From the NCBI GenBank assembly GCA_002269645.1, contig NIVC01001873.1, positions 62,001 to 126,000 on the forward strand: a stretch of 64,000 nucleotides of DNA, in the 5' to 3' direction. Below are positions 14,611 to 62,208 of this stretch, one piece after another; position 1 is the first letter of the stretch; every line of letters begins with the position of its first letter. A program made the translations under genes and the position numbers. The notes beneath the pieces are model-generated. The model was not told the origin of the DNA. It ran no database searches and saw only the letters and a program-made list of their open reading frames with translations. Source of the DNA: Macrostomum lignano. Taxonomy: Eukaryota.

Positions 14611-14989
14611 TCATTGTCTTACTCTCGATACGTCTATTTGTTTCTTTTTTCTAAATGCTTTCTGCTCTCTGCTTATTCCTCTCTGATTGCTTATTCGTAA
14701 TTTTTTCAACTAAGTTCTTGTAAAACCCTTCTCTTGTATGAGCACATTTGTTAGGTTCCTATATGCATGTAGGGTCTTAACATTTGACATTGTACAGTTG
14801 TCCTTGATTATTGTGAAATAAAATTCGATAAGCAAGGATAAGGAGGATCGCATCGCATATCCTGGATCACGTGATCCAAATAAGGTTTAGCGTGAAATCT
14901 AGGAGCGCTTCATCTCAAAATACGAGTCTCTTTTTCTGCGAATCAGACATCCACTGCAAATTATTAAACGTCAGTCTCTTGTTAGATTC

Positions 14990-16810
14990 AAGGCTGTCAC
15001 CTGTTAAATCCAGGCTGTCACCTGTTATATTGGAGCTGTCACCTGTTAGATCCAGGCTGTCACCTGTTATATTGAAGCTGTCACCTGTTAGATTGGAGCT
15101 GTCACCTGTTAAATCCGAGTTGTCACCTGTTAAATCCGAGTTGTCACCTGTTAGATTAAAGCTGTCACCTGTTAGATTGGCGCTGTCACCTGTTAGATTG
15201 CAGCTGTCACCTGTTAGATCCAAACTGTCACCTGTTAGATTGGCGCTGTCACCTGTTAGATCCGAGCTGTCATTTGTTAGATCCAAGCTATCACCTGTTA
15301 GCTCCGAGCTGTCACCTGTTAGATCCAAGCTACCACCTGTTAGCTCCGAGCTGTCACCTGTTAGATCCAAGCTATCACCTGTTAGATTGCAGCTGTCACC
15401 TGTTAGATCCGAGCTGTCACCTGTTAGATCTGAGCTTTCACCTGTTAGATCCGAGCTATCACCTGTTAGCTCCGAGCTGTCACCTGTTAGATCCGAGCTG
15501 TCATTTGTTAGATCCAAGCTATCACCTGTTAGCTCCGAGCTGTCACCTGTTAGATCCAAGCTATCACCTGTTAGCTCCGAGCTGTCACCTGTTAGCTCCG
15601 AGCTGTCACCTGTTAGATCCGAGCTGTCACCTGTTAGATCCAAGCTATCACCTGTTAGCTCCGAGCTGTCACCTGTTAGATCCAAGCTATCACCTGTTAG
15701 CTCCGAGCTGTCACCTGTTAGATCCAAGCTATCACCTGTTAGCTCCGAGCTGTCACCTGTTAAATCCAAGCTATCACCTGTTAGCTCCGAGCTGTCACCT
15801 GTTAGATCCAAGCTACCACCTGTTAGCTCCGAGCTGTCACCTGTTAGATCCAAGCTATCACCTGTTAGATTGCAGCTGTCACCTGTTAGATCCGAGCTGT
15901 CACCTGTTAGATCTGAGCTTTCACCTGTTAGATCCGAGCTATCACCTGTTAGCTCCGAGCTGTCACCTGTTAGATCCGAGCTGTCATTTGTTAGATCCAA
16001 GCTATCACCTGTTAGCTCCGAGCTGTCACCTGTTAGATCCAAGCTATCACCTGTTAGCTCCGAGCTGTCACCTGTTAGCTCCGAGCTGTCACCTGTTAGA
16101 TCCGAGCTGTCACCTGTTAGATCCAAGCTATCACCTGTTAGCTCCGAGCTGTCACCTGTTAGATCCAAGCTATCACCTGTTAGCTCCGAGCTGTCACCTG
16201 TTAGATCCAAGCTATCACCTGTTAGCTCCGAGCTGTCACCTGTTAAATCCAAGCTATCACCTGTTAGATCCGAGCTGTCACCTGTTAGATCTGAGCTTTC
16301 ACCTGTTAGATCCGAGCTATCACCTGTTAGCTCCGAGCTGTCACCTGTTAGATCCGAGCTGTCATTTGTTAGATCCAAGCTATCACCTGTTAGCTCCGAG
16401 CTGTCACCTGTTAGATCCAAGCTATCACCTGTTAGCTCCGAGCTGTCACCTGTTAGCTCCGAGCTGTCACCTGTTAGATCCGAGCTGTCACCTGTTAGAT
16501 CCAAGCTATCACCTGTTAGCTCCGAGCTGTCACCTGTTAGATCCAAGCTATCACCTGTTAGCTCCGAGCTGTCACCTGTTAGATCCAAGCTATCACCTGT
16601 TAGCTCCGAGCTGTCACCTGTTAAATCCAAGCTATCACCTGTTAGCTCCGAGCTGTCACCTGTTAGATCCAAGCTACCACCTGTTAGATTGCAGCTGTCA
16701 CCTGTTAGATCCGAGCTGTCACCTGTTAGATTAGAGCTTTCACCTGTTACACTTAGAGCTGACCTGTTACATTTAGATCTGTCACCTGTTTAGATTGGAA
16801 CTGTCACCTG
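14990..16810. repeat. Minisatellite, 21-bp unit (GCTGTCACCTGTTAGATCCGA)
   Basis: About 85 copies; generates the spurious 640/585/486-aa ORFs. Confidence 0.97.
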
Positions 16811-19405: not shown

Positions 19406-21613
19406 TATCTACTGAGCATCACATTAGCTACTGAGCATCACAATAATCTACTGAGCATCACATTAGCTACTGAGCATCACAATAATCTACTGAGCATCAC
19501 ATTAGCTACTGAGCATCACAATAATCTACTGAGCATCACATTAGCTACTGAGCATCACAATAATCTACTGAGCATCACATTAGCTACTGAGCATCACAAT
19601 AATCTACTGAGCATCACATTAGCTACTGAGCATCACAATTAGCTACTGAGAATCACAATTAGCTACTGAGCATCACAATTAGCTACTGGCCATCACAATT
19701 AGCTACTGACCATCACAATTAGCTGCTGACCATCACAATTAGCTACTGACCATCACAATTAGCTGCTGACCATCACAATTAGCTGCTGGCCATCACAATT
19801 AGCTACTGCCCATCGCAATTAGCTACTGACCATCACAATTAGCTACTGGCCATCACAATAATCTACTGCCCATCACAATTAGCTGCTGACCATCACAATT
19901 AGCTGCTGACCATCGCAATTAGCTGCTGACCATCACAATTAGCTGCTGACCATCGCAATTAGCTGCTGACCATCACAATTAGCTACTGGCCATCGCAATT
20001 AGCTGCTGACCATCACAATTAGCTACTGGCCATCACAATAATCTACTGCCCATCAAAATTAGCTGCTGACCATCACAATTAGCTGCTGACCATCGCAATT
20101 AGCTGCTGACCATCACAATTAGCTGCTGACCATCGCAATTAGCTGCTGACCATCACAATTAGCTACTGGCCATCGCAATTAGCTGCTGACCATCACAATT
20201 AGCTACTGGCCATCACAATAATCTACTGCCCATCAAAATTAGCTGCTGACCATCACAATTAGCTACTGACCATCACAATTAGCTACTGCCCATCGCAATT
20301 AGCTGCTGACCATCACAATTAGCTACTGGCCATCACAATAATCTACTGCCCATCACAATTAGCTACTGAGCATCACAATAATCTACTGCCCATCACAATT
20401 AGCTACTGAGCATCACAATTAGCTGCTGACCATCGCAATTAGCTGCTGACCATCACAATTAGCTACTGGCCATCGCAATTAGCTGCTGACCATCACAATT
20501 AGCTACTGGCCATCGCAATTAGCTGCTGACCATCACAATTAGCTACTGGCCATCACAATAATCTACTGCCCATCACAATTAGCTGCTGACCATCACAATT
20601 AGCTACTGACCATCACAATTAGCTACTGACCATCACAATTAGCTACTGGCCATCACAATTAGCTACTGCCCATCGCAATTAGCTGCTGACCATCACAATT
20701 AGCTACTGGCCATCACAATAATCTACTGCCCATCACAATTAGCTGCTGACCATCACAATTAGCTGCTGACCATCGCAATTAGCTGCTGACCATCACAATT
20801 AGCTGCTGACCATCGCAATTAGCTGCTGACCATCACAATTAGCTACTGGCCATCGCAATTAGCTGCTGACCATCACAATTAGCTACTGGCCATCACAATA
20901 ATCTACTGCCCATCAAAATTAGCTGCTGACCATCACAATTAGCTGCTGACCATCGCAATTAGCTGCTGACCATCACAATTAGCTGCTGACCATCGCAATT
21001 AGCTGCTGACCATCACAATTAGCTACTGGCCATCGCAATTAGCTGCTGACCATCACAATTAGCTACTGGCCATCACAATAATCTACTGCCCATCAAAATT
21101 AGCTGCTGACCATCACAATTAGCTACTGACCATCACAATTAGCTACTGCCCATCGCAATTAGCTGCTGACCATCACAATTAGCTACTGGCCATCACAATA
21201 ATCTACTGCCCATCACAATTAGCTACTGAGCATCACAATAATCTACTGCCCATCACAATTAGCTACTGAGCATCACAATTAGCTGCTGACCATCGCAATT
21301 AGCTGCTGACCATCACAATTAGCTACTGGCCATCGCAATTAGCTGCTGACCATCACAATTAGCTACTGGCCATCACAATAATCTACTGCCCATCACAATT
21401 AGCTGCTGACCATCACAATTAGCTACTGACCATCACAATTAGCTACTGACCATCACAATTAGCTACTGGCCATCACAATTAGCTACTGCCCATCGCAATT
21501 AGCTGCTGACCATCACAATTAGCTACTGGCCATCACAATAATCTACTGCCCATCACAATTAGCTACTGAGCATCACAATAATCTACTGCCCATCACAATT
21601 AGCTACTGAGCAT
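19406..21613. repeat. Minisatellite, 20-bp unit (AGCTACTGACCATCACAATT) with higher-order structure
   Basis: 39-bp dimers at the start, then 20-mers; variant CATCAAAATT recurs in units starting at 20041, 20221, 20901 and 21081. Confidence 0.97.
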
Positions 21614-21655
21614 AATTGCAGTGCCCCACGTATTGCAGTGCCCCATCTGGTTGCC

Positions 21656-22322
21656 ATGGAGATCCCGCCCCAGCTAGCCAAGGACTGCGGCTTCGGCCCT
21701 CACCCGGTCCGCGTGCTGCCAAACATCTTCGTGGCAATGAGCGACGGAATTCGCTTAGCTGTTCGACTCTGGCTGCCCAGCAACAGCGGCGTAATTAGTG
21801 AACAGTTTCCCGGCCAAACAGTCTGGCCGGTGTACACCCCAGGCGAGGCGCCGGGCTTGGCGAAGTGCCCGGCCGTGCTGGAGTACCTGCCGTATCGCAA
21901 AGACGACATCACGGCAGTCCGCGACCACCGTCGGCACGTCTGGACGGCTTCGCACGGCATCGCCGTGGCCAGGGCCGACCTGCGCGGCTGCGGCGACTCG
22001 GACGGTCACTGCTCGGACGAGTACTCGCCTCAGGAGCTGCTAGACGGCCGCCAGTTGATCGCCTGGCTGGCCGGCCAGTCCTGGACAAATGGCCGAATTG
22101 GGCTCTACGGCAAGAGCTGGGGCGGATTCAACGGCCTGCAGCTGGCCGAGATGGGCTGTCCGGGCCTGGCCGCAGTCGTGAGCATCTACAGCTCGGACGA
22201 TCGGTTCAACAGCGACATTCACTACACAGGCGGCTGCGTTATTGGCACCGAGGCGCTGACCTGGAGCTCCTTCATGCTGGCCATCAACTCGCTGCCCCCC
22301 AGCCCGGCAGTTCGGCCAGCCG
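21656..22322 (+). CDS. CocE/NonD-family (peptidase S15-like) alpha/beta hydrolase, exon 1
   Basis: AMSDGIRLAVRLWLP, LEYLPYRK (oxyanion Tyr), ADLRGCGDSDG and nucleophile elbow GKSWGG; phase-1 donor G|GTGACC (alternative at 22331); an upstream exon is possible via the AG at 21637-21638. Confidence 0.9.
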
Positions 22323-22424
22323 GTGACCCGGGTACTTGATACCCCAGCCAAGTGAACCGCTGCTCTATAGGAAAAAATTCCCCAATCCACTCATAAACCC
22401 CTGTGTCAGATTAAGTAGATTCCG

Positions 22425-22700
22425 CCCACATTGAATAGAATTCCCCCACTCAACAACTGGAAAATACCCCCACATTGAGTAGAAGAATTCCCTCCACCCA
22501 ACAACTGGAAAATACCCCCACACTGAGTAGAAGAATTCCCTCCACCCAACAACTGGAAAATACCCCCACACTGAGTAGAAGAATTCCCCTCCACTCAACA
22601 ACTGGAAAATACCCCCACACTGAGTAGAAGAATTCCCCTCCAATCAACAACTGGAAAATACCACTCATGTTGAGTAGAAGAATTCCCCCCTCCCACTCAT
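22425..22700. repeat. Intronic minisatellite, ~48-bp unit (GAGTAGAAGAATTCCCTCC...)
   Basis: Tandem array inside hydrolase intron 1. Confidence 0.9.
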
Positions 22701-22795
22701 GAACCGGAAGATTCTCATAATTTAGTAACTACGAGCTAAAAAGGTTGAAGAAAAATGCCCGGTGAAGAAAAATACTACACTAATAGATCCCACAG

Positions 22796-23667
22796 GCAAT
22801 GACTGGCTGCAGGCCTGGCGGGACCGACTCAACTGGGACGGGCATCGGCCCTGGATTGACAGGTGGCTGCGGCATCAAACACCGGACGATTACTGGCGCA
22901 GGGGCTCTGTGAGGTTCGGCCTGAACCAGCTGACTGTCCCGGTGCTGCTCATCGGCGGCTGGCACGATCTGTACTCGGACGCGCTGCTCCGCCTGGCCGA
23001 CCGCCTGCCCAACACGGCCAGCTGCGCCCTGCTTGGCCCCTGGTCTCACGACTGGCCGGACACGGCCGCCCCGGGCCCGAGCCTTGCCTTCACTGACGAG
23101 TGCCTGCGCTGGTGGCGGCTGCACCTGGTCGGAGAGGCCGGCGTCAGCCAACAGTTGGCGCCGATCTCGCGATTTCGCGTCTTCCAACGACTCGACAACA
23201 ATGTCAGGAATGCGACGGTGTGGCGCGGCCGCTGGCTGGCTGCCGACAGCTATCGGGAGCTGCTGGCTCCAGCAGGCCGGGCTGCCCAGTTCCGGCTGAC
23301 TGGAGGTCAGCAACTCGAGTCTGGCTCGGCCGAGCCCGGGCCCGACTGCTGGTCTGTCGATTTGTCGTCTCGGGTCGAATGCGGTTTCGCCTATCCGGAG
23401 TTTCTGTCGTTTGGCGATAAAGACGACGCGCCTGATCAGGCGATTAGCAACCGCATGGCAACCGTGTGGCGGGTGGACAGCCTGGGCGAGGATCTGGACC
23501 TGTTTGGCAGCGCCGAGGCGTCGCTGAATCTTCAGCTGGTTCAGGCGAATCCGTCGGCCAATCCAACCGCTTCGCCCACTATCGGTGTCCGACTGTCCGA
23601 ACGCGATCCGGACACTGGCCGGGAGACCCTAGTAACCTGGGGAGTGGCCAATTTGAATCTGATGCAG
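22796..23667 (+). CDS. CocE/NonD-family hydrolase, exon 2
   Basis: Acceptor CCCACAG|GC; HQTPDDYWRRGS, LIGGWHD (catalytic Asp), LGPWSH (catalytic His); donor CAG|GTAGCT. Confidence 0.9.
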
Positions 23668-23769
23668 GTAGCTGACTGTGATGTATTCACTGCGGTACTA
23701 CTGATAGTACCTACCACTGATAAAATGCAAGACAACATTCACGTCGCCAAAAACTGGTTTTTCAGAGGA

Positions 23770-23882
23770 GAGCTGAAGAGAGGAAGAGAAGAGAAGAGGA
23801 GAGGAGATGAGAGGGGAGGAGAGGAGAGGGGAGGAGAGGAGACGAGAGGGGAGGAGATGAGAGGAGAGGAGAGGAGAGGAGC
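23770..23882. repeat. (GAGGA)n-like purine microsatellite in hydrolase intron 2
   Basis: Visible. Confidence 0.9.
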
Positions 23883-23905
23883 AGATGGTGTAAAGATCCC
23901 ACAAG

Positions 23906-24302
23906 CGGTCCAGCTGTGGCAGGCCGCAGCTGCAGCAAACCTTCACCGATCCGCCCTCGCAGGACACCAACGGATTCGCTACAAACTCGACTCGTCAATT
24001 CTCGGCCGGCCGAGTTATTGTCCGGCTTCGAGCCGCCACCCACCGGTTCGCCCGCGGCCGGGGCGTGGTGCTGGCCCTGTCTTCGGGCCTGTGGCCGCTG
24101 GCCTGGCGATGCCCGGGCACCAGCGGCTCGGTGCTGCGAGTTCGCGTGTCAGCAGAGCAGCCGGAGCCGAACGTTCTGCGTCTGCCACTGCTGAGCGCTG
24201 AGGCTGCGGCTGAGGCGGCTCAGCTGGCTAAGAAGGACGAGCTGTTGAGCGCTCCGCCCAGGCTGGGCCCGGCGCCGCCTCTGCTTCAGCTGAGCAGTCG
24301 GG
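23906..24302 (+). CDS. CocE/NonD-family hydrolase, exon 3 (PepX_C-like beta domain)
   Basis: VRLRAATHRFARGRGVVLALSSGLWPLAWRCP...VLRLPLL matches the CocE C-terminal motif; acceptor position uncertain (several in-phase AGs from 23905 to 23935); donor G|GTTGGT. Confidence 0.75.
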
Positions 24303-24479
24303 GTTGGTTGGCTGACAATTTTTAGCTACTGTTAGACTAAGCATTTGCAATTGCTCTTTATTTAGGCAAAAAGCTACCGCGTTCCTCACAATGGGTAGAA
24401 ATGCATAGGTACCACCGGGAAATTCCACCTCATTTAGTAGACGAATTTCTCCCACTCATCAAATAAGACGATTCCCCAT

Positions 24480-24893
24480 CGAGTAGAAGAATTCAACAGA
24501 GAATTCCTCTCTTTGAGTGAAAGAATTCCCCTCATCAACAGAGAATTCCTCTCTTTGAGTGAAAGAATTCCCCTCATCAGCTGAGAATTCCTCTCTGAAA
24601 GAAAGAATGCCCCTCATCAACTGCGAATTCCTCTCTTTGAGTGAAAGAATTCCCCTCATCAACAGAGAATTCCTCTCTTTGAGTGAAGGAATTCCCCTCA
24701 TCAACTGCGAATTCCTCTCTTTGAGTGAAAGAATTCCCCTCATCAACAGAGAATTCCTCTCTTTGAGTGAAGGAATTCCCCTCATCAACTGAGAATTCCT
24801 CTCTTTGGGTGAAAGGATTCCCTCATCAACTGAGAATTCCTCTCTTTGGGTGAAAGGATTCCCTCATCAACTGAGAATTCCTCTCTTTGGGTG
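24480..24893. repeat. Minisatellite, ~40-bp unit (GAATTCCTCTCTTTGAGTGAAAGAATTCCCCTCATCAAC), left part
   Basis: Array interrupted by a hAT-like element; resumes at 26182. Confidence 0.93.
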
Positions 24894-26181
24894 TAGGGGT
24901 GTTCGGGTCGGCCATTTTTTCGGGGTTCGGGGTTTACCCCGAACCCGGTACCCCTACCCCGAACCCCGAACCCCGTCCCGAACATTTCTTCCAACCCCGA
25001 ACCCCGAACCCGGTACCAAAACCCGACCCGACCCCGAACGTAACCCCGAACATTTTCACGCTTATTTTGGTCAATCATTTTAATAAATTCAGTTTTCAGT
25101 TTTCAATTTTTCAGTTTTTAGTTTTGAATTTCAGTTTTAAAATCAGTTTTATACATTGAGATGTGCCTTAACAGCTTCAACCACTTAGCCTTGTGGTTTT
25201 ATTTCCCTTAGCTACTCTACAACTAGGAAAAGAAATATGAAACACTTCTTGCAATGGGATTGGGATTGAGATGGAAGGAATACCAAGACCCAAGATCTAA
25301 TAGTAAGATACATGAAAGTTCACAACTAAAATCAGGACCATTTCGTACCTATACTTACAACGAAATTGCTTTCATAGTAATATTACATCTATGAGCTTAT
25401 TTAAGCTGCAAAAATAGAGTACAATAAAATTAGATTATACCCTGTAGTGCAGATATCAGTAGAGATAGAACTAGAGCGATAGAGATAGCACAGATAAAAC
25501 AATGAAACAATGAAACAGGAGAGTTAATCACAAATATTTATTTATTTTTACTTTTGACTACAGTTAACAGTAAGTCAGTAGTGGTATAACAGAATTGCTA
25601 TGTAAAAACTAAAGTGACGTCTTTACATAAAATTGTATGCTGATATGAGTAGGTAATCATTGTGATAATTGATTGGCGACTGATGCGTGGAGAATAATAG
25701 TGTATTTATACATTTTAAGCTTCCTCATCCAATCCAGAAGTTCAGACCATGTTACACGTAGCACATGCAAAATTATTACTGAACGTAATTTTTTAAATCA
25801 TCAACTGCAAGACTGAATGGGTCGAAAAACTACAATCGTTATTTACCAGAAAGTGTAAATGAATCCATGGTTCTATCTGCTATTTCCGTTTCAAATTGTA
25901 TGTAAAATATAACTTAAGTTGTACCTGAAACTCAATGCATATCTTTCGTATTGTGGATTTTGCATAAGGAGTAAAAAGTGCTTGAAAATATTCTTGAGAA
26001 TGATAATTGTTCAAAACCCCGAAAACCCCGAAAACCCGGTGGCCAAACCCGACCCGAACCCCGAACCCGGTACCCCTACCCCGAACCCCGAACCCGACCC
26101 GGAACACCTACCCCGAACCCCGAACCCGGTACCAAAACCCGACCCGAAACCCGACCCGACCCCGAACCCCGAACACCCCTA
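24894..26181. mobile_element. Non-autonomous hAT-like DNA transposon, 1288 bp
   Basis: TIRs TAGGGGTGTTCGGG / CCCGAACACCCCTA; 8-bp TSD TTTGGGTG at 24886-24893 and 26182-26189; subterminal CCCGAACC repeat clusters; no ORF. Confidence 0.92.
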
Positions 26182-26690
26182 TTTGGGTGAAAGGATTCCC
26201 TTCATCAACTGAGAATTCCTCTCTTTGAGTGAAAGGATTCCCTTCATCAACTGAGAATTCCTCTCTTTGAGTGAAAGGATTCCCCTCATCAACAGAATTC
26301 CTCTCTTTGGGTGAAAGGATTCCCTCATCAACTGAGAATTCCTCTCTTTGGGTGAAAGGATTCCCTTCATCAACTGAGAATTCCTCTCTTTGGGTGAAAG
26401 GATTCCCTCATCAACTGAGAATTCCTCTCTTTGGGTGAAAGGATTCCCTTCATCAACTGAGAATTCCTCTCTTTGAGTGAAAGGATTCCCCTCATCAACA
26501 GAATTCCTCTCTTTGAGTGAAGCAATTCCCCTCATCAACAGAATTCCTCTCTTTGAGTGAAGCAATTCCCCTCATCAACAGAATTCCTCTCTTTGAGTGA
26601 AGGAATTCCCCTCATCAACAGAATTCCTCTCTTTGAGTGAAGGAATTCCCCTCATCAACAGAATTCCTCTCTTTGAGTGAAGGAATCGTT
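26182..26690. repeat. Minisatellite, ~40-bp unit, right part
   Basis: Same unit as 24480-24893. Confidence 0.93.
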
Positions 26691-26909
26691 CTTCATCGAT
26701 TTAACTGGTAGGATTTTGCCTGCACCTTCTGCTCACGTCGGATAACAAAGAAGTGAACTCGAAGCACGGTATTTCTGGGCCCAGGCTGCTGCGGCCTACA
26801 GCCCAGCCGAGGCAATGACCATGCCTTTAGGTCCGCAGATGCGGGCGCGAGAAAAGTGAAGCAGCGCCTCCACTGTCTCTCCTTTTATAACTTTGAAAAA
26901 AACCTTTCA

Positions 26910-26915
26910 TGAGAG

Positions 26916-26970
<55 letters not shown>
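26910..26970. repeat. (GA)n microsatellite
   Basis: Visible. Confidence 0.95.
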
Positions 26971-26978
<8 letters not shown>

Positions 26979-27068
26979 AAGAGAGAGAGTGAGATTCCCC
27001 TTCATCAGATGAAAAAGAAGAATTCCCCTTTCTCAAGCCATAAGCCTGATTAACTCGTCAATTTCCAG

Positions 27069-27487
27069 ACGGCAGTTTCGGCTCCGCAGACCCCAACTTT
27101 CGCCGCTGGCTGGAGTGGGACCTGGTCACCGAGCGCTGGGTTCACCACCTGGAGTCAGACTATTGCCCCGCGATCGAGCTGCTGCTGCCTGATCAGCACG
27201 GGGTCAGGCTCAGGTGGCACCGGCACTACTGGCATGGCATCGGAGGCGGCGAGGCCCACGGAGACGACTGCAATCCCACATCGGAGGCTGATCACCAGCT
27301 AGAAGTGAGCTGGCCTGCTCAAAAAACTGATGTAGCAGTCCACGCCAGCTGCTACCTTGGCTACGACTCCAGCAGCAGTGGAGGTGGCCACCACTTTGTC
27401 TCGAGAGCTCGACTGAGAATTCTGCTCAATGGCCGAGAGTTCTTCTGTCGGGATTATTCGGACAGAATAGCGAATGCGACCGCTTGA
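27069..27487 (+). CDS. CocE/NonD-family hydrolase, exon 4 (terminal)
   Basis: Acceptor TTTCCAG|AC in phase 1; stop-free ...WDLVTERW...FVSRARLRILLNGREFFCRDYSDRI...*, resembling the C-terminal extension of long bacterial CocE proteins; joined CDS 2355 nt, in frame. Confidence 0.75.
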
Positions 27488-27524: not shown

Positions 27525-27830
27525 GGGAATTCCCTGAGATGGACAGGAGAGACTCAGTGGGGAATTCCCTGAGATGGACAGGAGAGACTCAGTGAGGAAT
27601 TCCATGAGATTGACAGGTGAGACTCAGTGGGGAATTCCCTGAGATTGGCGGGAGAGACTCAGTGGGGAATTCCATGAGATTGACAGGAGAGACTCAGTGG
27701 GGAATTCCATGAGATTGACAGGTGAGACTCAGTGGGGAATTCCATGAGATTGGCGGGAGAGACTCAGTGGGGAATTCCATGAGATTGACAGGTGAGACTC
27801 AGAGGGGAATTCCTTCAGATTGGCTGGGGA
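27525..27830. repeat. Minisatellite, 35-bp unit (GGGGAATTCCATGAGATTGACAGGTGAGACTCAGT)
   Basis: Tandem array between the convergent 3' ends of the hydrolase and ABCG genes. Confidence 0.93.
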
Positions 27831-28070
27831 GACTCAAAGTTATCAGTGCTTTTAAGCTGGTGGAGGCTTGATACGAGGGTAAATAATCATAAATCTGTAG
27901 CAATGTAGCATTTTAGGCAACTTTGAGTCAAAATGTTTGAAATAAATGAAGAATAACGAAACGTTTTTCGATATAATCTATTGTTGTATTGTTAAAGAAT
28001 GAACAGAATGAACTTCATGTTTGTTTCCAACGCATTTTGGTTACCATGGCAACCGATGCTCATTTCCTGG

Positions 28071-29983
28071 TCAGTTCCTAGACTTCTCCCTGGCCCTCAG
28101 CCACAGACAGGCAAAGGCCAGCAGCCGCAGGCCGAGAATCAGGGCGCACAGCATGCCCAGATTGAAGCCCGTTCGCTCCGCGCTAAAGTTCAAACTTTCG
28201 ATGACGTCACTGCCGGTGCGGAAACACCTGCCGCTGCTGCCGTCCAACGGACAGCTGATGTTGGCCACGCGGCTCCACTGGTTCACCACCAGGGTCTCGT
28301 AGCCGTAGCTGAACCAGGACAGGTAGCGGAGCCAGTCCAGCCAGACAGGTATGCTGGCCTGGTTGAGGAAGAATCCGCCCAGGAGCAGGAAGGGCAGGAT
28401 GGCCGGGTTGGACACGGCCAGGGCGATGTCGATTCGGCCGCTGGCGGTGGCTACAAAGTAGGCCAGGGAGACGGCCGACTTGCAGATGAGCACAACCACG
28501 AGGAGGGCCATCAAGAAGGCCGGCAGGCTGCGCTCCAGCCCGATGGCCCAGTAGATGACCACAGTGAAGCTGAACGGAAGCAGCAGGAAGAGCGGCGTCT
28601 CTGCCAAATTCTTGCACAGGAAGTAGGCGTCCACCCGGTACATGCCGTTGTGATGCTCTCGAAAAAAAATCGGCAACTCCAGCGGGAAAGAGTTGAGCAC
28701 AGTGTAGAAGTTTGAGAAGGTCGTGTTAGTCAGGAATAGGAACAGCGCGCCGTTCAAGTTCATCACTCCGTTCTGGTCGTAGCGTTGGTCAAAGTAAACG
28801 GCGGCCACGATCACCGCCACCACGATGGTCTGCAGGATGCGCACGGCGAAGACGTTCGCGTCGCGAGCCTGGGCCAGCCAGCAGCGCCACAGCAGCGCCA
28901 GCACCTGCCGGCTCCAGGACGCTCGGTAGGGCGACTGGCCCGTCAACTGGCTGGCCACGCTGGCCACCTGCTGGCTGTCGCAGAAGTCCCGACAGCGGAC
29001 GGCCTCCAGCACGGCCTCGGCCAGGGCCGATTTTGCGAACGTGACGGCCAGCTGGTCGACTCGCTGCCGGCACTCGGCTTCCGAGCCGGCGCGCACAGCC
29101 AGCGCGTGCACGAAATGGTCGGCCGGGTTGAAGTTGGCCGGGCACGGGTAGCCGCAGTCGGCGAAGAATCCGAGCGCGTCCGACGCCGGGCCCAGATAGG
29201 CGACCCGGCCCTCGGCCATCAGCATCAGCTGGTCGAACAGGGCGAACGACTCCGAGGACGGCTGGTGGATGGTGCACAGAATGGTGCGGCCGTTGGCGGC
29301 CAATCGCCGGAGAGTCCGCACGACAGTCTCGGCCATGTAGCTGTCCAGCCCGGAGGTCGGCTCGTCGCAGAACATCAGTGGCGGATTGGTTAGCAACTCG
29401 GACGCGAAGCTGAGGCGCTTCATCTCGCCGCCTGAGATGCCCTTGCGCGTGCCGGGATTCCCTATGTAGTCTTCGGCGCACTTGACCAGTCCCATCTCGT
29501 CCAGCACTTCCTCGACTCGTTGGCGCCGGTCCCGCAGCGACATTTTCGACTCCATGCGTAGCAGCGCCTGAAACCAGAGGTGCTCCCGAACCTTCAGCGT
29601 CCCGATGAACATGTCGTCCTGCTGCACGTAAGCCGACAAAGCTTTGATGCCTTTGTCAACGCTAAGGCCGTTCACCTTGACTGAGCCCTGAATGGTCAGG
29701 CTGGACTGGTTTCTGGCCGTGAGCACGTTGAGCAGAGTGCTCTTGCCGGCCCCGGACGCGCCCAGGATGGCCAGCAGGGTGCCAGGCTTGGCCACGCCGG
29801 TCACCCCGTGTAGGATCTGCTTCCTGGCGTCCGTCTCGTAGGCCCGGCCGCAGCAGTCGGTGGCGATGACAGGCGCGAATACGTTGACATTCTCCCAGGC
29901 CAGTGTGATGGAGCTGATTGTTTCTACCAGGGTGAGGCTGCGCCTGTACCGACTCGAGTCCCGGCTGGGCTGTCTGTCAGTGC
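28071..29983 (-). CDS. white: ABCG half-transporter, white-like, exon 2 (NBD + TMD)
   Basis: Walker A GASGAGKST, Q-loop YVQQDD, signature ISGGE, Walker B/D-loop FCDEPTSGLD, H-loop TIHQP, six-TM ABC-2 domain; phase-1 acceptor CTCTTCAG|GC. Confidence 0.93.
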
Positions 29984-30664
29984 CTGAAGAGCGGTGGTTG
30001 TGCTGCAGGGGTGACAGTCGGCCGCCTCATTCGGGCTCCGGACCCGGCTAGCTTTCCTTGCTTTTGCCAATGCTTTCTTGTCATTTACTATTTCGAGCGC
30101 CTTGCCCATAGACATCTGAATAAAACTATAAATACGTCCTTAATTAACAGATCTTTATAGAAAGTTCCGACACTTTTAAGCCCGGTGCAAAAACGGAAGC
30201 AGCTCTGCAAACACAAATTTGGTGTCATTTCCTGACAGTCTGACAGTGAAAGCGACAATGAATATAGAACACGATGGCTTGTCCTTAAAGAAACTAACTG
30301 TTGGCTTTAGTCGTCATCAACCTTCAAGGCAGCCTTCTCAACATAAGCCTCAACCTGTAGCACCACTGCGTCCACACGCAGTTGCGCTATAAGCTGAACA
30401 CTGCCCCCCCCCCGCCGTTCACTGCTGCCACACCTGCATGACCACATGAAAAGTTACAGCAATTGACGCAATTGAATATTACGCAGTTTTATGAAATTTG
30501 TTTGCGCAAATTTTCTTATCGGGCGTCCATGACTGATAAGTAGAAGTTACTAATGGGCACACACTGGAGGACGGGCAGTGCAACTGACAAAAAATAGAAG
30601 TTGATAGCCAACTATCTATCATTTCCCTGTCCCTGTCAGTGTGATATGCGTTGTCAATACCACA

Positions 30665-31512
30665 GAACAGCAACTGAGGATCTGGGAGGCTGGCACAGCA
30701 ACTGAGGATCTGGAGGGCGGCCCTGTCCAGCAACTGAGGATCTGGGAAGCTGGTCCAGCAACTGAGGATCTGGGAAGCTGGTCCAGCAACTGAGGATCTG
30801 GGAAGCTGGTCCAGCAACTGAGGATCTGGGAGGCTGGCACAGCAACTGAGGATCTGGGAGGCTGGCCCAGAAACTGAGGATCTGGGAGGCTGGCACAGCA
30901 GCTGAGGATCTGGGAGGCTGGCCCAGCAACTGAGGATCTGGGAGGCTGGCACAGCAGCTGAGGATCTGGGAGGCTGAATCATCGACTGAGGATCTGAGAG
31001 GCTGGCCCAGCAACTGAGGATCTGGGAGGCTGGCCCAGAAACTGAGGATCTGGGAGGCTGGCCCAGCAACTGAGGATCTGGAGGGCGGCCCAGTCCAGCA
31101 ACTGAGGATCTGGGAAGCTGGTCCAGCAACTGAGGATCTGGGAGGGCGGCCCAGTCCAGCAACTGAGGATCTGGGAAGCTGGTCCAGCAACTGAGGATCT
31201 GGGAAGCTGGTCCAGCAACTGAGGATCTGGGAGGCTGGCACAGCAACTGAGGATCTGGGAGGCTGGCCCAGAAACTGAGGATCTGGGAGGCTGGCACAGC
31301 ACCTGAGGATCTGGGAGGCTGGCCCAGCAACTGAGGATCTGGGAGGCTGGCACAGCAACTGAGGATCTGGGAGGCTGAATCATCGACTGAGGATCTGAGA
31401 GGCTGGCCCAGCAACTGAGGATCTGGGAGGCTGGCCCAGAAACTGAGGATCTGGGAGGCTGGCCCAGCAACTGAGGATCTGGGAGGCTGAATCATCGACT
31501 GAGGATCTGGGA
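30665..31512. repeat. Intronic minisatellite, ~28-bp unit (CAGCAACTGAGGATCTGGGAGGCTGGCA)
   Basis: Tandem array within the white intron. Confidence 0.95.
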
Positions 31513-56697: not shown

Positions 56698-58226
56698 ATG
56701 GCCACTAACGCCACCATCTCTAAAGAAACTGACCCGGTCGCCTCTGGCTCACCGGGATCAGCCGCTCCGGTAGCTACCACTGGTAGCACCAACGCCCAAC
56801 CTGGTCCAACCGGGCCAGCTGACGCTGCCGCCGATCACCCTGGCCGCCAGTCTAGCCGACCGCGCACGGCCGAGTCTCGACGACAGCGGAACATCCGCCG
56901 CAACCGTAAGCGGCAGGAGAAGCGGGCTGCTGCTGCGTCTGAGGAGGGCGGGCAAGCCGCGGTGAGGCCTTCGGGAGCCACCGCAGCGGGGAGGCCCTCT
57001 GGGGAGTCCGGTGGCGCGGCTGGGCCGTCAGGAACCGCCGTGTCCTCGGGCTCTCAGGGGGGCAACCCTGCCGGCCTACCGCCTTCCAAAGACAAAGCGG
57101 CCCCGCTCAAGACCTCCGAGTCCTACGCGTCCAAGGTCAAGCAGCCGCTGCAACCCACCGTGATGATCCTCGGCGGGGATTTCGACCTGACGCCCGAGCA
57201 GCTCGACGTCGCGTGGCGTACCATCGACGAGGGCTTGCTCAATCTAACCCTGGAGGGCGTCTTCGTGGACATCGTCAAGTCCACCAAGGCGAACGGGTGC
57301 ATCCTACTGTGGTGCAAATCCGAGGAGAGCACCCAGCTCCTGCGGGATCAGCTGCCCAAGTTCGACTGGCACAGCGACCTGGGCCAGCTGACCTTCGCCT
57401 TGGAGAGCGAGCGGCCGAAGACCATCCGCCATCGGATTTGGGTCCCGGCCGACAGTGCAATCAAGTCCGGGGAGCAGCTGCGGCAGCTCCTGCTCAAGCG
57501 GCACCCGGATCTCGACGCCAGTGGTCTTGTGTACCACAGCACGGTCCGCAAGGGCACGACCGGGGCCACAGTCATCCTCGGCCTGACGGAGGGATGGGCC
57601 AAGCGGCTACCGCACGGCACAAACCTCCACCTTGGTCTCCATCAACTGACCATCCTCCGCTGTGAGGAGGGCAAGGTGGAGACCAAGAAAGACGGGAAGC
57701 GCGCCGCTCCCGGAGCTGGGGCTCATGCCCCGCCGGCCAAGCGGCAGCAGCAACCCGATCCCGAGCCTAACAAGGCTATTCGCGCTGCTGAGTCCGCCTC
57801 GCGCGGACGTAGACCCGCCCGCAGTAGCCGGCGGTCCGGTCTAATCCAGCGCGCACTTGACGAAGCTCAGTCTCTGAGACTTCACCTCGAGCAGACTCGT
57901 GCCGCTCGCAAAAACACTGAAAGCCAGCCGAGGGAACTGGACGACGGCACGGCTCAGCCTTCCAACTGGTGGATTACCACCAGGAGGACGCTGCCGGCCG
58001 AGCTCAGACTCCCGACGGCGGGGCGCAAGGCGAAGGCAGCAGCCGTACCCCAGTCGCTGGGGAGGAGGGCGGTGTAGCGCGGCTAGGTGACTCACCTGCC
58101 GTGGGCGCCGTGTCCGCCTCCGCGGCGGCTGGGGAGGCGGCTGAGCCTGAGCCAATGGAAATTGGCGACTCAACTCTCACCGATGAGGCTGAGAATGAGT
58201 TGCTTTTCTCCTCCCCTGGACAGTAG
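56698..58226 (+). CDS. LINE ORF1 (DUF4780-like central domain), probable frameshift near 57960
   Basis: Low-complexity basic N-terminus; core ...GCILLWCKSEESTQLL...RIWVP...VILGL...LHLGLHQLTI resembles LOA-type ORF1; the acidic C-terminus in the alternative frame stops 2 nt before the ORF2 ATG. Confidence 0.7.
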
Positions 58227-58228
58227 AC

Positions 58229-61200
58229 ATGACTGTCTCCCAGGGCATCCACTGCTTGCAGGTCAACCTGCAGCACAGCATTGCTGCTTCAGTCAACCTC
58301 TTGAAGCACACTGACCAATACGTGCCAGGGATTATCCTTATCCAGGAACCTTGGACGCTTAGGGGCAGCCCCCAACATGTCCCCACCGGCTACCAGTGTT
58401 TAACCGCTGGTACCCGGGAGGGAAACCTGGCACCAAGATCCTGCATCATGGTGTCCAGTTCTATTAACGCATGGCTCAGATCAGACCTGTCCACCAGGGA
58501 CATCTGTGTCATCCAGTCTGAAGACATACTCCCTGGGAGGACTACCCTCATCGCCTCGGTTTACCTACCGGGCGACGGCGAGATGATCCCAGTAGAGCTT
58601 GTCACACTGGTCGAGCTCTGCTCCACCAGAAACTATGAGCTGCTCGTGGCAGGTGACATCAATGCCCACCACACCCACTGGGGCAGTTCTGATATAAACC
58701 AGAGAGGTGAAGACTTCCTGGCTTATATTGCTACTACAACCCTTGAGTTCTGTAACTCGGGTAGTACCCCTACCTTCAATAACGGACGCCGATCGGAGGT
58801 GCTGGATGCCACCCTCGCCACGCCCAGGCTCTTCCGAGCACTAGGGAGTGGCGGGTGCTTCCTGAGGCGTCCCTCTCCGATCACAAGTTCATCTCTTTCA
58901 CGCTGGCCAGCGCCCGTAACGCAGGCCAGCTTTACTGGAAACGGAATGCTAGGAATACCGACTGGACCGCCTTCAGGCTTGCCCTGGAGGAGACCTATCG
59001 TTGCACTAGCACTCCAGTCTCCATCAACACCTGCGAAGAAGCAGATGAATTTGCGGCCGCACTTACGGACTCGCTCACTGCTGCCTTCGAAGCCTCATGC
59101 CCACTAAAGGCATATAAAGGCAAACAGTCGGCCCCATGGTGGAACCCGCAGCTTGGCGACCTCCGTCGCAGAACCAAAAGGCTTCACCGCAGGGCCCAAA
59201 AAACTAAAAACCCGGCCGACCAAACCGCCTACCTGAACTCTATCCACGAGTTCAAGAGGCAGGTTAGGAACGCCAAAACCAACAAGTGGCGCGAATACTG
59301 TGAGGAACTTGAGGGCTCCCGCCCCACCTCCAGAATCGTTAAAGCCCTCACCCTGGACAAAATGTCCAAACTCTCCTCAGTCAAGAGAGCCGACGGCTCG
59401 CTCACTGAGAACCCAGGAGAAACACTGGAAGCGATGCTAACAGCGTTTTTCCCGAACGAGCCAGCTAGGCCCGACCCCCCTGACCACTCAGTGGGCGGTC
59501 ACGTACTGGCTGACTCAATCATCACGGAGGACCGCGTTACTAAAGCTGTCTCCTCCTTCAAACCCTTCAAATCCCCAGGACCGGACGGCGTTGTGCCAGC
59601 CTTCCTGCGGGAGGCGGTGAAATGCACCGGTTTCCTGCGGAACCTTTGCCGGCTTCTGAAAGCTTGCATTGTGCTCGGCTTTGTTCCGAAATCCTGGACC
59701 GAGGCCAAGGTGGTCTTTATCCCCAAGCCTGGCCGACCGGACTACCGGTCCATTAAATCCTTCAGACCAATTAGCCTCACCTCCTCATTGGTGAAGCTGT
59801 TAGAGAGACTGGTGCTCTGGCGCCTCCTCTCTGTGGAACTGAAGAACAAGCCGCTCAGTGAGAACCAGCATGCCTTTCGGGCAGGCAGGTCCACGGAGAG
59901 CGCGCTTCACGTTCTGGTTGACATGCTGGAGAAAGCCGTTCTTGGTAATGGCTACGCTCTCGCTGTCTTCCTCGACATTGTTGGAGCCTTTGATAATGTC
60001 CTCTTTGAGGCTTTTGACAGAGCTCTACGTGCTAGAGGAACCCACTCGCACCTCACCCGGTGGATCATGTATATGATCAGCCACCGTACTGCCACCGCAC
60101 ACCTGTTGGGCCACCAACGGACGGTAACCGTCTGCAAAGGCAGCCCCCAGGGCGGTGTCCTCTCTCCAGTTCTCTGGAACATGGTCATCGATGAGCTCCT
60201 CCAGGACAGCCATCTTGACCCCATCCTCAAGGTCGGTTACGCCGATGATGTCACTGCCGTGGCATCCGGACCGTCACCTGAAACCCTTAGAGATCTTTTG
60301 CAAAACTTCATTCGCTCTGCTGAACGTTGGGCGGACAGGTGCGGCCTCAGGCTCTCCGAGACCAAAACTGTCGCGATCATGTTCACCAGCAGGGTAAACT
60401 GGCGTATTCGCCCACTAAAGCTTTACGGGGTGGAAATTCCATCCTGCAAGCAAACCAAGTGTCTCGGCGTTACGTTGGACCACCGGCTGAGCTGGTCCAC
60501 CCACGTCCAGGCCAAAACCAAAAAAGCCCTCGCGATTCTTGCGCAGCTGCGCAGAGCCGTCGGCACCACCTGGGGCCTCACCCCAAAGCGTCTCTGGTGG
60601 ATCTATACCGCAATGGTCCGACCGGCCGTTACTTACGCCGGCCTGGTCTGGACCAGCGCCTTGCAGATTAAAACCTGCCACGAAGCCCTCAAAAAGGTGC
60701 AGGGACGTGCGTGCCGCATGATCCTGAATGCCCCGCTCTCTGCTCCCTTTGACGGCCTCAACGCCTTTCTCTGCCTCCCGCCTCTGGACATCTTTGCCCG
60801 TCGCGAGGCTGCTAAAACCACCCGCCGGCTCATCGAGGCTGGTGTTAGCTTCAAGCCACAAAGAGCGATGGCGAAGCGCAAGCTCCTGCCGCACTCTGAT
60901 CTGTGCCTTAAAGTTCTGGAGGAGAGTGGGAGTGCGGCTGTCCTTTCGGACGCTGAGCCGCGCTCCCTCAATCTCTACCAACGCTTCAAGGTCACGATCC
61001 CCTCCAGGAGAACGCCAACGACAGCTGGGCCCCTCAGGAGGTTCACTGCTTCACTGACGGATCCTCCAAAGACGGTTTATCCGGCTTTGGAGTCTGTATC
61101 CTTATCAACGGCCGCGTGATTGCTACTCACGCCCAACACACTGGCAGACTCTCCAGCGTCTTCCAGAATGAAGTCCTTGCCATCAGCTCCTGTGCAGCTG

Positions 61201-61931: not shown

Positions 61932-62053
61932 CCGGCCCCGCGCCCTAGCCTATGCGGGTCTTTCAGGGATTAGCGGAATGGGCGACGCTCGCCTCCCCGC
62001 TGCGTCTTCGGACCGCCCTGCAGCTAAGTCAAGTAAGTCAAGCGGTAAGGAAG

Positions 62054-62178
62054 GCCACATCGCCCGCCGGTGCCCTGCTGGCGGATCTCAGGGCCAAGGT
62101 CGCTGCTTCAACTGCTCCGGCTGGGGCCACAGCGCGGCTGTCTGTCCGTCAAAGGCTCGGCCGTCGGGAAACTTCTGA
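62054..62178 (+). pseudogene. gag: Gypsy gag, 3' part (rest of zinc knuckle 1 and knuckle 2)
   Basis: GHIARRC completes CFRCGKE; then CFNCSGWGHSAAVC...PSGNF*. Confidence 0.9.
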
Positions 62179-62208
62179 GGGTTGGCAGCGAAGGGCCAGC
62201 TCCAACCC
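62166..62208 (+). promoter_or_regulatory. Predicted -1 programmed ribosomal frameshift signal (gag-pol)
   Basis: Slippery heptamer G GGA AAC in the gag frame, 6-nt spacer, stem GGGTTGG/CCAACCC; the -1 frame is pol. Confidence 0.8.

What the first reader, a model, noticed from the sequence alone, without database searches (positions are those of the whole stretch)
21656..27487. Bacterial-type CocE/NonD hydrolase carrying spliceosomal introns (horizontal gene transfer candidate)
Seen: four GC-rich exons join through GT-AG sites into a 784-aa ORF with an intact Ser(GKSWGG)/Asp(GGWHD)/His(GPWSH) triad, the oxyanion Tyr, and even the long C-terminal extension. Known: CocE/NonD (peptidase S15-like) enzymes with this architecture are mainly bacterial and patchy in animals. 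Inference: a domesticated bacterial esterase/peptidase with gained introns and unknown substrate. It lies tail-to-tail with an ABCG transporter, which could be coincidence or a xenobiotic-handling pair.
Basis: partly seen in the sequence, partly recalled or inferred. Interest (0 to 1): 0.7.

Follow-up and report, generated by a model that had tools for sequence, protein, structure and literature searches.

The report
Old animal-lineage CocE/NonD hydrolase gene in flatworm
This is a real, intact, four-exon gene of the flatworm Macrostomum lignano for a serine hydrolase of a mostly bacterial family, but its nearest relatives are genes of other animals and protists, so it is an old eukaryotic resident and not a fresh bacterial import.

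Summary
Four GC-rich exons (21656-22331, 22796-23667, 23963-24302, 27069-27487, + strand) join through GT-AG introns into one reading frame of 768 aa. Alternative in-frame splice sites give 756-782 aa; I could not reproduce 784. The protein passes the curated CocE/NonD model (133 bits against a cutoff of 66). It keeps Tyr80, Ser154, Asp283 and His310, and it folds confidently (pLDDT 87).

The family is overwhelmingly bacterial, and named animal members are few: Capitella, Lingula, two copepods and Macrostomum. However, the closest non-self hits are eukaryotic. In neighbour-joining trees the flatworm protein falls in an all-eukaryote clade of animals, oomycetes and other protists, with 99-100% bootstrap support. 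The alien index is about -11. Codon usage matches the neighbouring ABCG gene. Capitella and Lingula share three intron positions, so the gene predates the split between those two phyla.

Any bacterial origin is therefore ancient and not specific to Macrostomum. The three Macrostomum introns are not shared with the other animals. The C-terminal extension also occurs in the bacterial homologues. ABCG adjacency was not seen next to the homologues I examined. The substrate remains unknown. This is an ordinary new member of a known family, of modest interest.

The parts
21656..22331 (+). Exon 1 (676 nt), starting at the ATG. It encodes aa 1-225 plus one base of codon 226. It holds the oxyanion Tyr80 (21893-21895) and the nucleophile Ser154 in GKSWGG (22115-22117).
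   Evidence: ORF and translation. The N-terminus aligns with the homologues' N-termini. tblastn of the model onto the window.
22332..22795 (+). Intron 1 (464 nt, phase 1, GTACTT..CCACAG). It contains a 48-bp tandem array at 22437-22687. In-frame alternatives are donor 22322/22323 and acceptor 22785-22786.
   Evidence: The junction AVRPAGDP|GNDWLQ is the one used in UniProt model A0A1I8JF83 (P0002).
22796..23667 (+). Exon 2 (872 nt). It holds Asp283 in GGWHD (22966-22968), His310 in GPWSH (23047-23049), and most of the beta (PepX_C-like) domain.
23668..23962 (+). Intron 2 (295 nt, phase 0, GTAGCT..TCGCAG). It contains an (AGAGG)n array at 23764-23881. Alternative in-frame acceptors at 23929 and 23935 would add 11 or 9 aa.
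   Evidence: Acceptor 23962 gives a gap-free alignment with the homologues and is used in UniProt models P0001 and P0002.
23963..24302 (+). Exon 3 (340 nt). It covers the end of the beta domain (..HRFARGRGVVLALSSGLWPLAW..) and the start of the C-terminal extension.
24303..27068 (+). Intron 3 (2766 nt, phase 1, GTTGGT..TTCCAG). Arrays of 42-bp and 40-bp units and CCCGAAC-rich stretches occur as direct repeats on both sides of an AT-rich core. An alternative in-frame acceptor lies at 27088-27089.
   Evidence: UniProt model P0001 reads through into this intron and lacks exon 4.
27069..27487 (+). Exon 4 (419 nt, including stop TGA at 27485-27487). It encodes the C-terminal all-beta extension, which ends LNGREFFCRDYSDRIANATA.
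   Evidence: Homology to the C-termini of animal, oomycete and bacterial homologues. The model is confident in most of this region, with loops of pLDDT 60-67. tblastn 100%.

Best explanation
The locus is an intact, nuclear, four-exon gene of Macrostomum lignano. It encodes a protein of about 768 aa, probably cytosolic because I see no N-terminal signal-like hydrophobic stretch (my reading of the sequence, not a predictor). The protein is a serine hydrolase of the CocE/NonD (MEROPS S15-type) family. It belongs to a subfamily of about 670-710 aa that carries an extra all-beta C-terminal domain.

Mechanism, inferred from conserved residues and the fold: Ser154 is the nucleophile, activated by His310 and Asp283. 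Tyr80, together with the backbone NH after the serine, forms the oxyanion hole. The enzyme should cleave an ester or an amide/peptide bond of a small substrate. The substrate is unknown.

Evolution: the gene belongs to a small, patchily distributed, monophyletic eukaryotic clade. Its members are Capitella, Lingula, copepods, unnamed marine animals, oomycetes and other protists. The clade is embedded in a very large bacterial family. The eukaryotic clade may ultimately descend from a bacterial gene, but that event is ancient. The Macrostomum copy has been resident long enough to take on host codon usage, acquire its own three introns and accumulate repeat-filled introns. The tail-to-tail ABCG neighbour is most likely coincidental.
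For: Shown:
- The spliced frame and its motifs.
- TIGR00976 at 133 bits against a cutoff of 66.
- Alignment to the CocE catalytic residues.
- Tyr80, Ser154, Asp283 and His310 are invariant in an 81-sequence alignment.
- 96 of 103 highly conserved columns are retained, within the range of the other eukaryotic members.
- AlphaFold2 model with pLDDT 87 and pTM 0.92. The best PDB fold match is cocaine esterase (E = 1e-33, TM 0.74), followed by aminopeptidase, alpha-amino-acid ester hydrolase and PepX structures.
- Eukaryotic genomic context: a white-type ABCG gene at 712 bits and an RT/RNase H element.
- The nearest relatives are eukaryotic.
- The unnamed relatives lie on gene-poor contigs. One of these has an animal-type neighbour, one relative comes from a marine eukaryote transcript catalogue, and one lies on a compact protist-like contig.
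- The all-eukaryote clade including the flatworm has 99-100% bootstrap support under Kimura, gamma and Dayhoff-6 distances. Capitella + Lingula has 92-95%.
- A 201-taxon tree gives an animal subclade and a protist subclade.
- Nine eukaryote-specific signature residues are shared by the flatworm, for example W in GPWSHDWP where bacteria have Y.
- Capitella and Lingula share three intron positions and phases.
- RSCU correlation with the ABCG neighbour is 0.88, and GC3 is 0.76 against 0.86.

Inferred: the chemistry, the cytosolic location and the ancient timing.
Against: - The trees are neighbour-joining on corrected distances only. No maximum-likelihood or site-heterogeneous model was available.
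- The flatworm protein is a long branch and its place inside the clade is unresolved: with oomycetes in 25-53% of replicates, basal to animals otherwise, and never with the other spiralians.
- Support for the clade drops to 65% when more 50%-identity representatives are added.
- None of the three Macrostomum introns coincides exactly with an intron of Capitella, Lingula or Lepeophtheirus.
- Several marine animal-like homologues are intronless. Repeated acquisition is therefore not excluded.
- No transcript evidence was available here. The public protein models of this gene are incomplete or frame-shifted.
- Seven columns agree with the bacterial majority but not with the other eukaryotes.
- The bacterial gene neighbourhoods are heterogeneous and do not fix a substrate: a peptide ABC importer, a BCCT transporter and an ATP-grasp enzyme.
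Confidence: 0.72

Rival explanations
1. Recent, lineage-specific horizontal transfer from a bacterium into the Macrostomum lineage, followed by intron gain.
For: The family is overwhelmingly bacterial: thousands of bacterial hits against a handful of named eukaryotes. No other named flatworm appears among the listed hits. The three introns are not shared with the other animals.
Against: - The best non-self hits are eukaryotic.
- The all-eukaryote clade has 99-100% bootstrap support.
- The alien index is about -11: ln 2.4e-100 (Capitella) minus ln 1.7e-95 (oomycete). Against the best named bacterium (3.3e-91) it is about -21.
- No bacterial protein exceeds about 37-39% identity.
- Codon usage is host-like.
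- Eukaryote-specific residues are shared.
Confidence: 0.05
2. Several independent acquisitions: flatworm, spiralians, copepods and protists each obtained the gene separately. The source would be one unsampled donor lineage, or one another (eukaryote-to-eukaryote transfer). The eukaryotic 'clade' would then reflect a common donor and not vertical descent.
For: - The distribution is extremely patchy.
- Oomycetes and other protists sit in the same clade.
- Many animal-like copies are intronless.
- Macrostomum introns are not shared, and the flatworm never groups with Capitella + Lingula as the species tree predicts.
Against: - Capitella and Lingula share three introns and group at 92-95%, and the copepods group together. 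At least part of the clade therefore follows the species tree.
- The 201-taxon tree separates an animal subclade from a protist subclade.
- No bacterial member of the clade was found in searches of 5.8 and 1.8 billion proteins. The nearest outgroup examined, P0110, is a normal bacterial operon gene.
- The flatworm's odd placement is what long-branch effects would produce.
Confidence: 0.17
3. The locus is a decaying or non-functional copy: a pseudogene or an unexpressed relic in a polyploid, repeat-rich genome.
For: - Other public Macrostomum models of this gene (P0001, P0003, P0209) contain frame-shifted stretches.
- The branch is long, and the usual C-terminal IPR motif is IAN here.
- Introns and flanks are packed with satellites, including a 2.2-kb 20-bp satellite that abuts the start codon.
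Against: - The window copy has an uninterrupted 768-codon frame across four exons, with all catalytic residues.
- 96 of 103 conserved columns are kept.
- The predicted fold is confident.
- Coding-type GC3 enrichment and host codon bias are present.
- The frame-shifted public models may be indel errors of an older long-read assembly.
Confidence: 0.05
4. Bacterial contamination or a chimeric assembly.
For: None beyond the bacterial flavour of the family.
Against: The gene has three GT-AG introns made of eukaryotic repeats. It has host-like codon usage. It lies 583 bp from a white-type ABCG gene and on the same sequence as a retroelement.
Confidence: 0.01

Closest known systems
Cocaine esterase CocE of Rhodococcus sp. 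MB1 (PDB 1ju3, 3i2j, 3pui)
   Same: It has the same three-part core: an alpha/beta-hydrolase domain, a helical insert and a jelly-roll beta domain. It has the same Ser-Asp-His triad and oxyanion Tyr at aligned positions. It is the best fold match, at E = 1e-33 and TM 0.74.
   Different: Identity is only about 20-21% in the structural alignment. By sequence, phmmer aligns only residues 71-315. The flatworm protein is about 190 aa longer, with an N-terminal insertion (aa 42-70) and a C-terminal domain of about 150 aa that CocE lacks. Nothing suggests cocaine or tropane esters as the substrate.
Bacterial ~670-685-aa CocE/NonD family hydrolases (for example Brevibacillus composti, Neobacillus niacini, Halomonas and Epidermidibacterium proteins named 'CocE/NonD family hydrolase')
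   Same: The architecture is the same along the full length, including the C-terminal extension ending ..F..W...IPR..V. Identity is 33-37%.
   Different: The bacterial genes have no introns and sit in operon-like contexts: a peptide ABC importer, a BCCT transporter and an ATP-grasp enzyme. They lack the eukaryote-specific signature residues. I found no characterised member and no solved structure of this subfamily.
Animal homologues: Capitella teleta CAPTEDRAFT_170378, Lingula anatina XP_013412643 (C-terminal part), Tigriopus californicus LOC131879004 and a Lepeophtheirus salmonis unnamed protein
   Same: They belong to the same eukaryotic clade (99-100% bootstrap), share signature residues, align along the full length (98% query coverage) and carry spliceosomal introns.
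   Different: Identity is only 31-32% by BLAST and 36-37% over trimmed columns. The intron positions differ from those in Macrostomum. Capitella and Lingula share three introns that Macrostomum lacks. The Lingula model is fused to methylthioribose-1-phosphate isomerase.
Alpha-amino-acid ester hydrolases (PDB 1mpx, 2b9v) and Xaa-Pro dipeptidyl-peptidase PepX (PDB 1lns, 6nff)
   Same: They are in the same structural superfamily and use the same catalytic machinery (fold matches at E = 1e-25 to 1e-20).
   Different: They are more distant than CocE. The PepX NCBIfam model scores 20 bits against a cutoff of 642. The amino-group-binding acidic cluster of the ester hydrolases was not examined.

Membership tests
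CocE/NonD family hydrolase (NCBIfam TIGR00976; Pfam Peptidase_S15 + PepX_C; MEROPS S15 type) | Whole-protein score above the curated family cutoff | tested here: met
   133.3 bits against a cutoff of 66.3. The match covers aa 26-607 of the protein and positions 1-548 of the 550-position profile.
CocE/NonD family hydrolase (NCBIfam TIGR00976; Pfam Peptidase_S15 + PepX_C; MEROPS S15 type) | Ser-Asp-His catalytic triad at the family's positions (CocE Ser117, Asp259, His287) | tested here: met
   Ser154, Asp283 and His310 align to the CocE residues. They are invariant in the 9- and 81-sequence alignments.
CocE/NonD family hydrolase (NCBIfam TIGR00976; Pfam Peptidase_S15 + PepX_C; MEROPS S15 type) | Oxyanion-hole tyrosine (CocE Tyr44) | tested here: met
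   Tyr80 in LPYRK aligns with CocE NPYDK. It is invariant in the alignments.
CocE/NonD family hydrolase (NCBIfam TIGR00976; Pfam Peptidase_S15 + PepX_C; MEROPS S15 type) | Alpha/beta-hydrolase domain followed by a jelly-roll beta (PepX_C) domain | tested here: met
   The AlphaFold2 model (pLDDT 87) superposes on full-length CocE over about 640 columns with TM 0.74. The homologues carry precomputed PF02129 + PF08530.
CocE/NonD family hydrolase (NCBIfam TIGR00976; Pfam Peptidase_S15 + PepX_C; MEROPS S15 type) | Hydrolase activity on an ester or amide substrate | not testable with these tools
   This needs recombinant protein and a substrate panel.
Xaa-Pro dipeptidyl-peptidase PepX (NCBIfam NF003780) | Score above the curated cutoff | tested here: not met
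   20.2 bits against a cutoff of 642, over a local stretch only.
Recent bacterium-to-animal horizontally transferred gene | Nearest relatives are bacterial, and the gene nests inside a bacterial clade to the exclusion of other animals | tested here: not met
   The best non-self hits are eukaryotic. The all-eukaryote clade has 99-100% bootstrap support.
Recent bacterium-to-animal horizontally transferred gene | Alien index above 45, or a bit-score excess (hU) of at least 30 for non-metazoan hits | tested here: not met
   From, the alien index is about -11 against the oomycete hit and about -21 against the best named bacterium. hU = 339 - 355, which is below zero.
Recent bacterium-to-animal horizontally transferred gene | Physically integrated in the host genome (introns, host genes on the same contig) | tested here: met
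   There are three GT-AG introns. A white-type ABCG gene lies 583 bp downstream, and a retroelement is in the same window.
Recent bacterium-to-animal horizontally transferred gene | Composition or codon usage that deviates from host genes | tested here: not met
   RSCU r = 0.88 with the neighbouring ABCG gene. GC3 is 0.76 against 0.86. Only one host gene was used as the yardstick.
Vertically inherited metazoan gene | Metazoan homologues form a clade congruent with the species tree, with shared intron positions | tested here: inconclusive
   - Animal monophyly has 32-67% support. Capitella + Lingula has 92-95% and three shared introns, and the copepods group together.
- Macrostomum never joins the spiralians and shares no intron exactly.
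- The distribution is limited to a few protostome lineages among the named hits.

The most novel reading that the evidence does not exclude
The Macrostomum gene was acquired separately from the other animal copies, for example from a stramenopile-like protist or an unsampled microbe. This would fit its occasional grouping with oomycetes and its private introns. It could since have been recruited, together with the adjacent white-type ABCG exporter, into a lineage-specific pathway for handling small molecules. More broadly, this could be an uncharacterised enzyme subfamily, with a C-terminal all-beta domain that matches no solved structure, that eukaryotes have captured or kept repeatedly.
Probability: 0.12. 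Interest if true: 0.55.

Novelty: new member of a known kind. Interest (0 to 1): 0.3.

Why it matters
The result corrects an attractive but premature horizontal-transfer call. A mostly bacterial family with introns in an animal is not enough, because here the nearest relatives are other eukaryotes.

It also gives a more complete gene model, with a fourth exon, than the public Macrostomum protein models seen here, which are truncated, read into intron 3 or are frame-shifted.

Finally, it points to a small and oddly distributed eukaryotic clade (an annelid, a brachiopod, copepods, a flatworm, oomycetes and other protists) of an uncharacterised CocE/NonD subfamily. The C-terminal domain of that subfamily has no structural match in the PDB. 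That is a modest lead for people who study ancient gene transfer, differential gene loss or alpha/beta-hydrolase diversity. It does not open a major question.

Tried and rejected
- Reproducing exactly 784 aa: the combinations of plausible GT/AG sites give 756-782 aa.
- Acceptors at 23929 and 23935: rejected in favour of 23962, because they add an insertion that no homologue has.
- Literature: searches for a published horizontal-transfer claim for this family or for Macrostomum found nothing relevant, and one search was uninformative because 'nond' matched ordinary words.
- Tigriopus: an exact look-up of the gene locus failed, so its introns were not mapped.
- Transcript evidence: the searches returned no close relative beyond the UniProt/MetaClust models and one frame-shifted fragment (P0209), and nothing that read as a spliced full-length transcript.
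- A second copy in the window: none found.
- Bacterial gene neighbourhoods as a guide to the substrate: three contexts, three different neighbours, no consensus.
- Fold search of the C-terminal extension alone: no significant PDB match, best E = 0.32.
- Conserved linkage with ABCG: not seen next to the Capitella, Lingula or Lepeophtheirus genes, but only 2-3 kb of flank was fetched.
- Bacterial contamination: rejected because of the introns and the flanking genes.

Full report
**What is there.** The window is eukaryotic, and the best protein matches are to Macrostomum lignano (UniProt A0A1I8JF83 at 97-100% identity and A0A1I8FTJ8). Between 21656 and 27487 on the + strand, four exons restore one reading frame:
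- 21656-22331
- 22796-23667
- 23963-24302
- 27069-27487

They are joined through three canonical GT-AG introns of 464, 295 and 2766 nt, in phases 1, 0 and 1. Exons are 60-69% GC and introns 42-52% GC. The introns consist largely of tandem arrays: a 48-bp unit in intron 1, (AGAGG)n in intron 2, and 42-bp and 40-bp units plus CCCGAAC repeats around an AT-rich core in intron 3.

My preferred product is 768 aa. Several alternative sites are also in frame and give 756-782 aa. The acceptor at 23962 and the junction 22331|22796 are the ones that leave no insertion relative to homologues. They are also the ones used in the public models. One public model (P0001) reads through into intron 3, and none seen here contains exon 4. 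Exon 4 is supported by homology of its product to the C-termini of animal, oomycete and bacterial relatives. Only one copy is present in the window.

**What the protein is.**
- It passes NCBIfam TIGR00976 (CocE/NonD family hydrolase) with 133 bits against a curated cutoff of 66, over aa 26-607.
- The best solved relative by sequence is Rhodococcus cocaine esterase (E = 3e-14). In that alignment Tyr80, Ser154, Asp283 and His310 fall on CocE Tyr44, Ser117, Asp259 and His287.
- These residues are invariant in an 81-sequence alignment.
- The flatworm protein keeps 96 of 103 highly conserved columns. That is within the range of the other eukaryotic members.
- An AlphaFold2 model built on that alignment is confident (pLDDT 87.1, pTM 0.92), apart from some loops of the C-terminal region.
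- Foldseek ranks CocE first (E = 1.4e-33, TM 0.74 on the target). It is followed by an archaeal aminopeptidase, the S. aureus CocE/NonD protein, alpha-amino-acid ester hydrolases and PepX.

The last ~150 residues are not covered by any of these structures. Modelled alone, they form a seven-stranded antiparallel sheet preceded by a helix (pLDDT 79) with no significant PDB match. This extension is not a peculiarity of the flatworm gene. The ~670-685-aa bacterial subfamily has it too, ending in a recognisable ..F..W...IPR..V motif.

**Where it comes from.** The family is overwhelmingly bacterial. A profile search gave 4652 proteins at E <= 1e-20 among the candidates scored, and almost all of the named ones are bacterial. 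The named eukaryotes are:
- Capitella teleta
- Tigriopus californicus
- Lepeophtheirus salmonis
- Globisporangium (oomycetes)
- Lingula anatina, identified through its cluster

About 25 unnamed sequences group with them. The ones I inspected are as follows:
- P0006, P0012 and P0233 lie on gene-poor contigs, and P0233 has an animal-type HTH neighbour.
- P0025 comes from a marine eukaryote transcript catalogue.
- P0281 lies on a compact protist-like contig with RCC1/WD40 and full-length ABCD genes.

The decisive point is that the flatworm protein's nearest non-self relatives are these eukaryotes and not bacteria. In the exhaustive search of 1.84 billion representatives the order was:
- the Tara animal-like group, 376 bits
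- the oomycete group, 361 bits
- Lepeophtheirus, 307 bits
- everything else, 303 bits and below

Tree results:
- Trees were neighbour-joining, with 82 taxa, 665 trimmed columns and 200 bootstraps. They place Macrostomum in a clade made only of eukaryotes, with 100% support under Kimura distances, 100% under gamma distances and 99% after Dayhoff-6 recoding.
- Capitella + Lingula receives 92-95%.
- With 201 taxa the clade gains four more members. Of these, P0233 and P0281 were inspected and look eukaryotic, the cluster of P0347 includes a Picozoa-labelled entry, and P0211 was not inspected.
- In that larger tree the clade splits into an animal subclade and a protist subclade, with support falling to 65%.

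Other tests point the same way:
- Nine alignment columns carry residues shared by the flatworm and at least 75% of the eukaryotic clade but by at most 6% of bacteria.
- Codon usage correlates with the adjacent ABCG gene (RSCU r = 0.88).

**Age of the animal gene.** I mapped the introns of the annotated Capitella, Lingula and Lepeophtheirus genes exactly onto their loci and projected them onto a protein alignment. Capitella and Lingula share three intron positions with identical phase. The gene therefore already had introns in the common ancestor of annelids and brachiopods.

None of the three Macrostomum introns coincides exactly with an intron in the other species. A Capitella phase-0 intron lies a few columns from Macrostomum intron 1. 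A Lepeophtheirus phase-2 intron lies two columns from intron 2. Macrostomum also lacks the three shared spiralian introns.

The flatworm branch is long and its position inside the clade is unstable. It is basal to animals in most replicates, with oomycetes in 25-53%, and never with the other spiralians. I cannot tell apart two scenarios: vertical descent with fast evolution and intron turnover, or a separate acquisition from another eukaryote. Both exclude a recent bacterial donor.

**Function.** The intact triad and the oxyanion tyrosine argue for an active serine hydrolase that cleaves an ester or amide bond. The N-terminus starts level with the bacterial proteins and has no signal-like segment, which suggests a cytosolic enzyme. 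This is inference from the sequence. The substrate is open. The bacterial homologues I inspected sit next to:
- an Opp/Dpp-type peptide ABC importer, with overlapping stop and start codons
- a BCCT transporter with a TetR regulator
- an ATP-grasp enzyme

**The ABCG neighbour.** The ORF at 28071-29804 on the - strand matches the eukaryotic pigment-precursor (white-type) ABCG family with 712 bits. It ends 583 bp from the hydrolase stop codon. I saw no ABCG next to the Capitella, Lingula or Lepeophtheirus homologues, although only 2-3 kb of flank was fetched. The pairing is best treated as coincidence until expression data say otherwise.

**Verdict.** The horizontal-transfer story needs to be moved far back in time and away from Macrostomum. 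This is a member of a small, old, patchy eukaryotic clade within a bacterial family. I rate it a new member of a known kind, with modest interest.

Main limitations:
- The phylogeny is distance-based only.
- The flatworm branch is long.
- There is no transcript evidence.
- Only one host gene served as the codon-usage yardstick.

Noticed in passing
window 19409-21613: A 2.2-kb satellite of about 110 copies of a 20-bp unit (CTACTGACCATCACAATTAG, 87% matches) runs to within about 40 bp of the hydrolase start codon. It leaves almost no conventional promoter space. Two TTGCAG motifs lie at 21620-21645, just upstream of the ATG, and could be spliced-leader acceptor sites. Trans-splicing is described for this species in the papers listed.
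   Followed up: partly
window 24303-27068 (intron 3): The intron has a nested layout of direct repeats. Arrays of 42-bp units (24493-24893) and 40-bp units (26182-26681), and CCCGAAC-rich blocks (about 24900-25050 and 26018-26174), flank an AT-rich core of about 1 kb. No inverted repeats were found. It may be an insertion into a pre-existing satellite, or a satellite-flanked mobile element.
   Followed up: partly
window 27525-27836: A 35-bp tandem array (8.9 copies) fills much of the 583-bp spacer between the hydrolase stop codon and the ABCG stop codon. Related GAATTCC-containing units recur in introns 1 and 3.
   Followed up: no
window 28071-29804 (- strand): A 577-codon uninterrupted ORF matches the white-type ABCG half-transporter model over positions 45-616 of 617 (712 bits). 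The N-terminal ~44 residues must lie in an upstream exon. The 338-codon ORF at 30479-31495 (-) had no family match.
   Followed up: partly
window 56698-62554 (+ strand): A run of long ORFs includes a reverse-transcriptase domain (58855-61119) and an RNase H-like stretch (61116-61931). It looks like a retrotransposon. It was not analysed or reconstructed.
   Followed up: no
window 14871-16793 (+ strand): A 640-codon ORF has only coiled-coil-type weak matches (SMC and Rad50 models far below their cutoffs). Long ORFs also overlap it on the opposite strand and in another frame. It is probably a repeat-rich or coiled-coil gene, or a compositional artefact.
   Followed up: no
Public Macrostomum proteins P0001, P0003, P0209 (no window coordinates): Other deposited models of this hydrolase are near-identical stretches interrupted by frame-shifted segments, and one is fused to a topoisomerase 2 model. 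They may reflect indel errors of an older assembly or decaying homeologous copies in this hidden polyploid (the abstract of PMC10468722 is listed).
   Followed up: partly
L005 2001-14118 (Lingula anatina LFEI02000157.1): The Lingula gene model fuses methylthioribose-1-phosphate isomerase (aa 1-366) to the hydrolase through an 1881-nt intron. It could be a real fusion or two neighbouring genes merged by the annotation.
   Followed up: no
L001, L002, L006 (marine metagenome contigs): Several animal-like homologues from ocean metagenomes are encoded without introns, on gene-poor contigs. This contrasts with the intron-bearing Capitella, Lingula, Lepeophtheirus and Macrostomum genes.
   Followed up: partly
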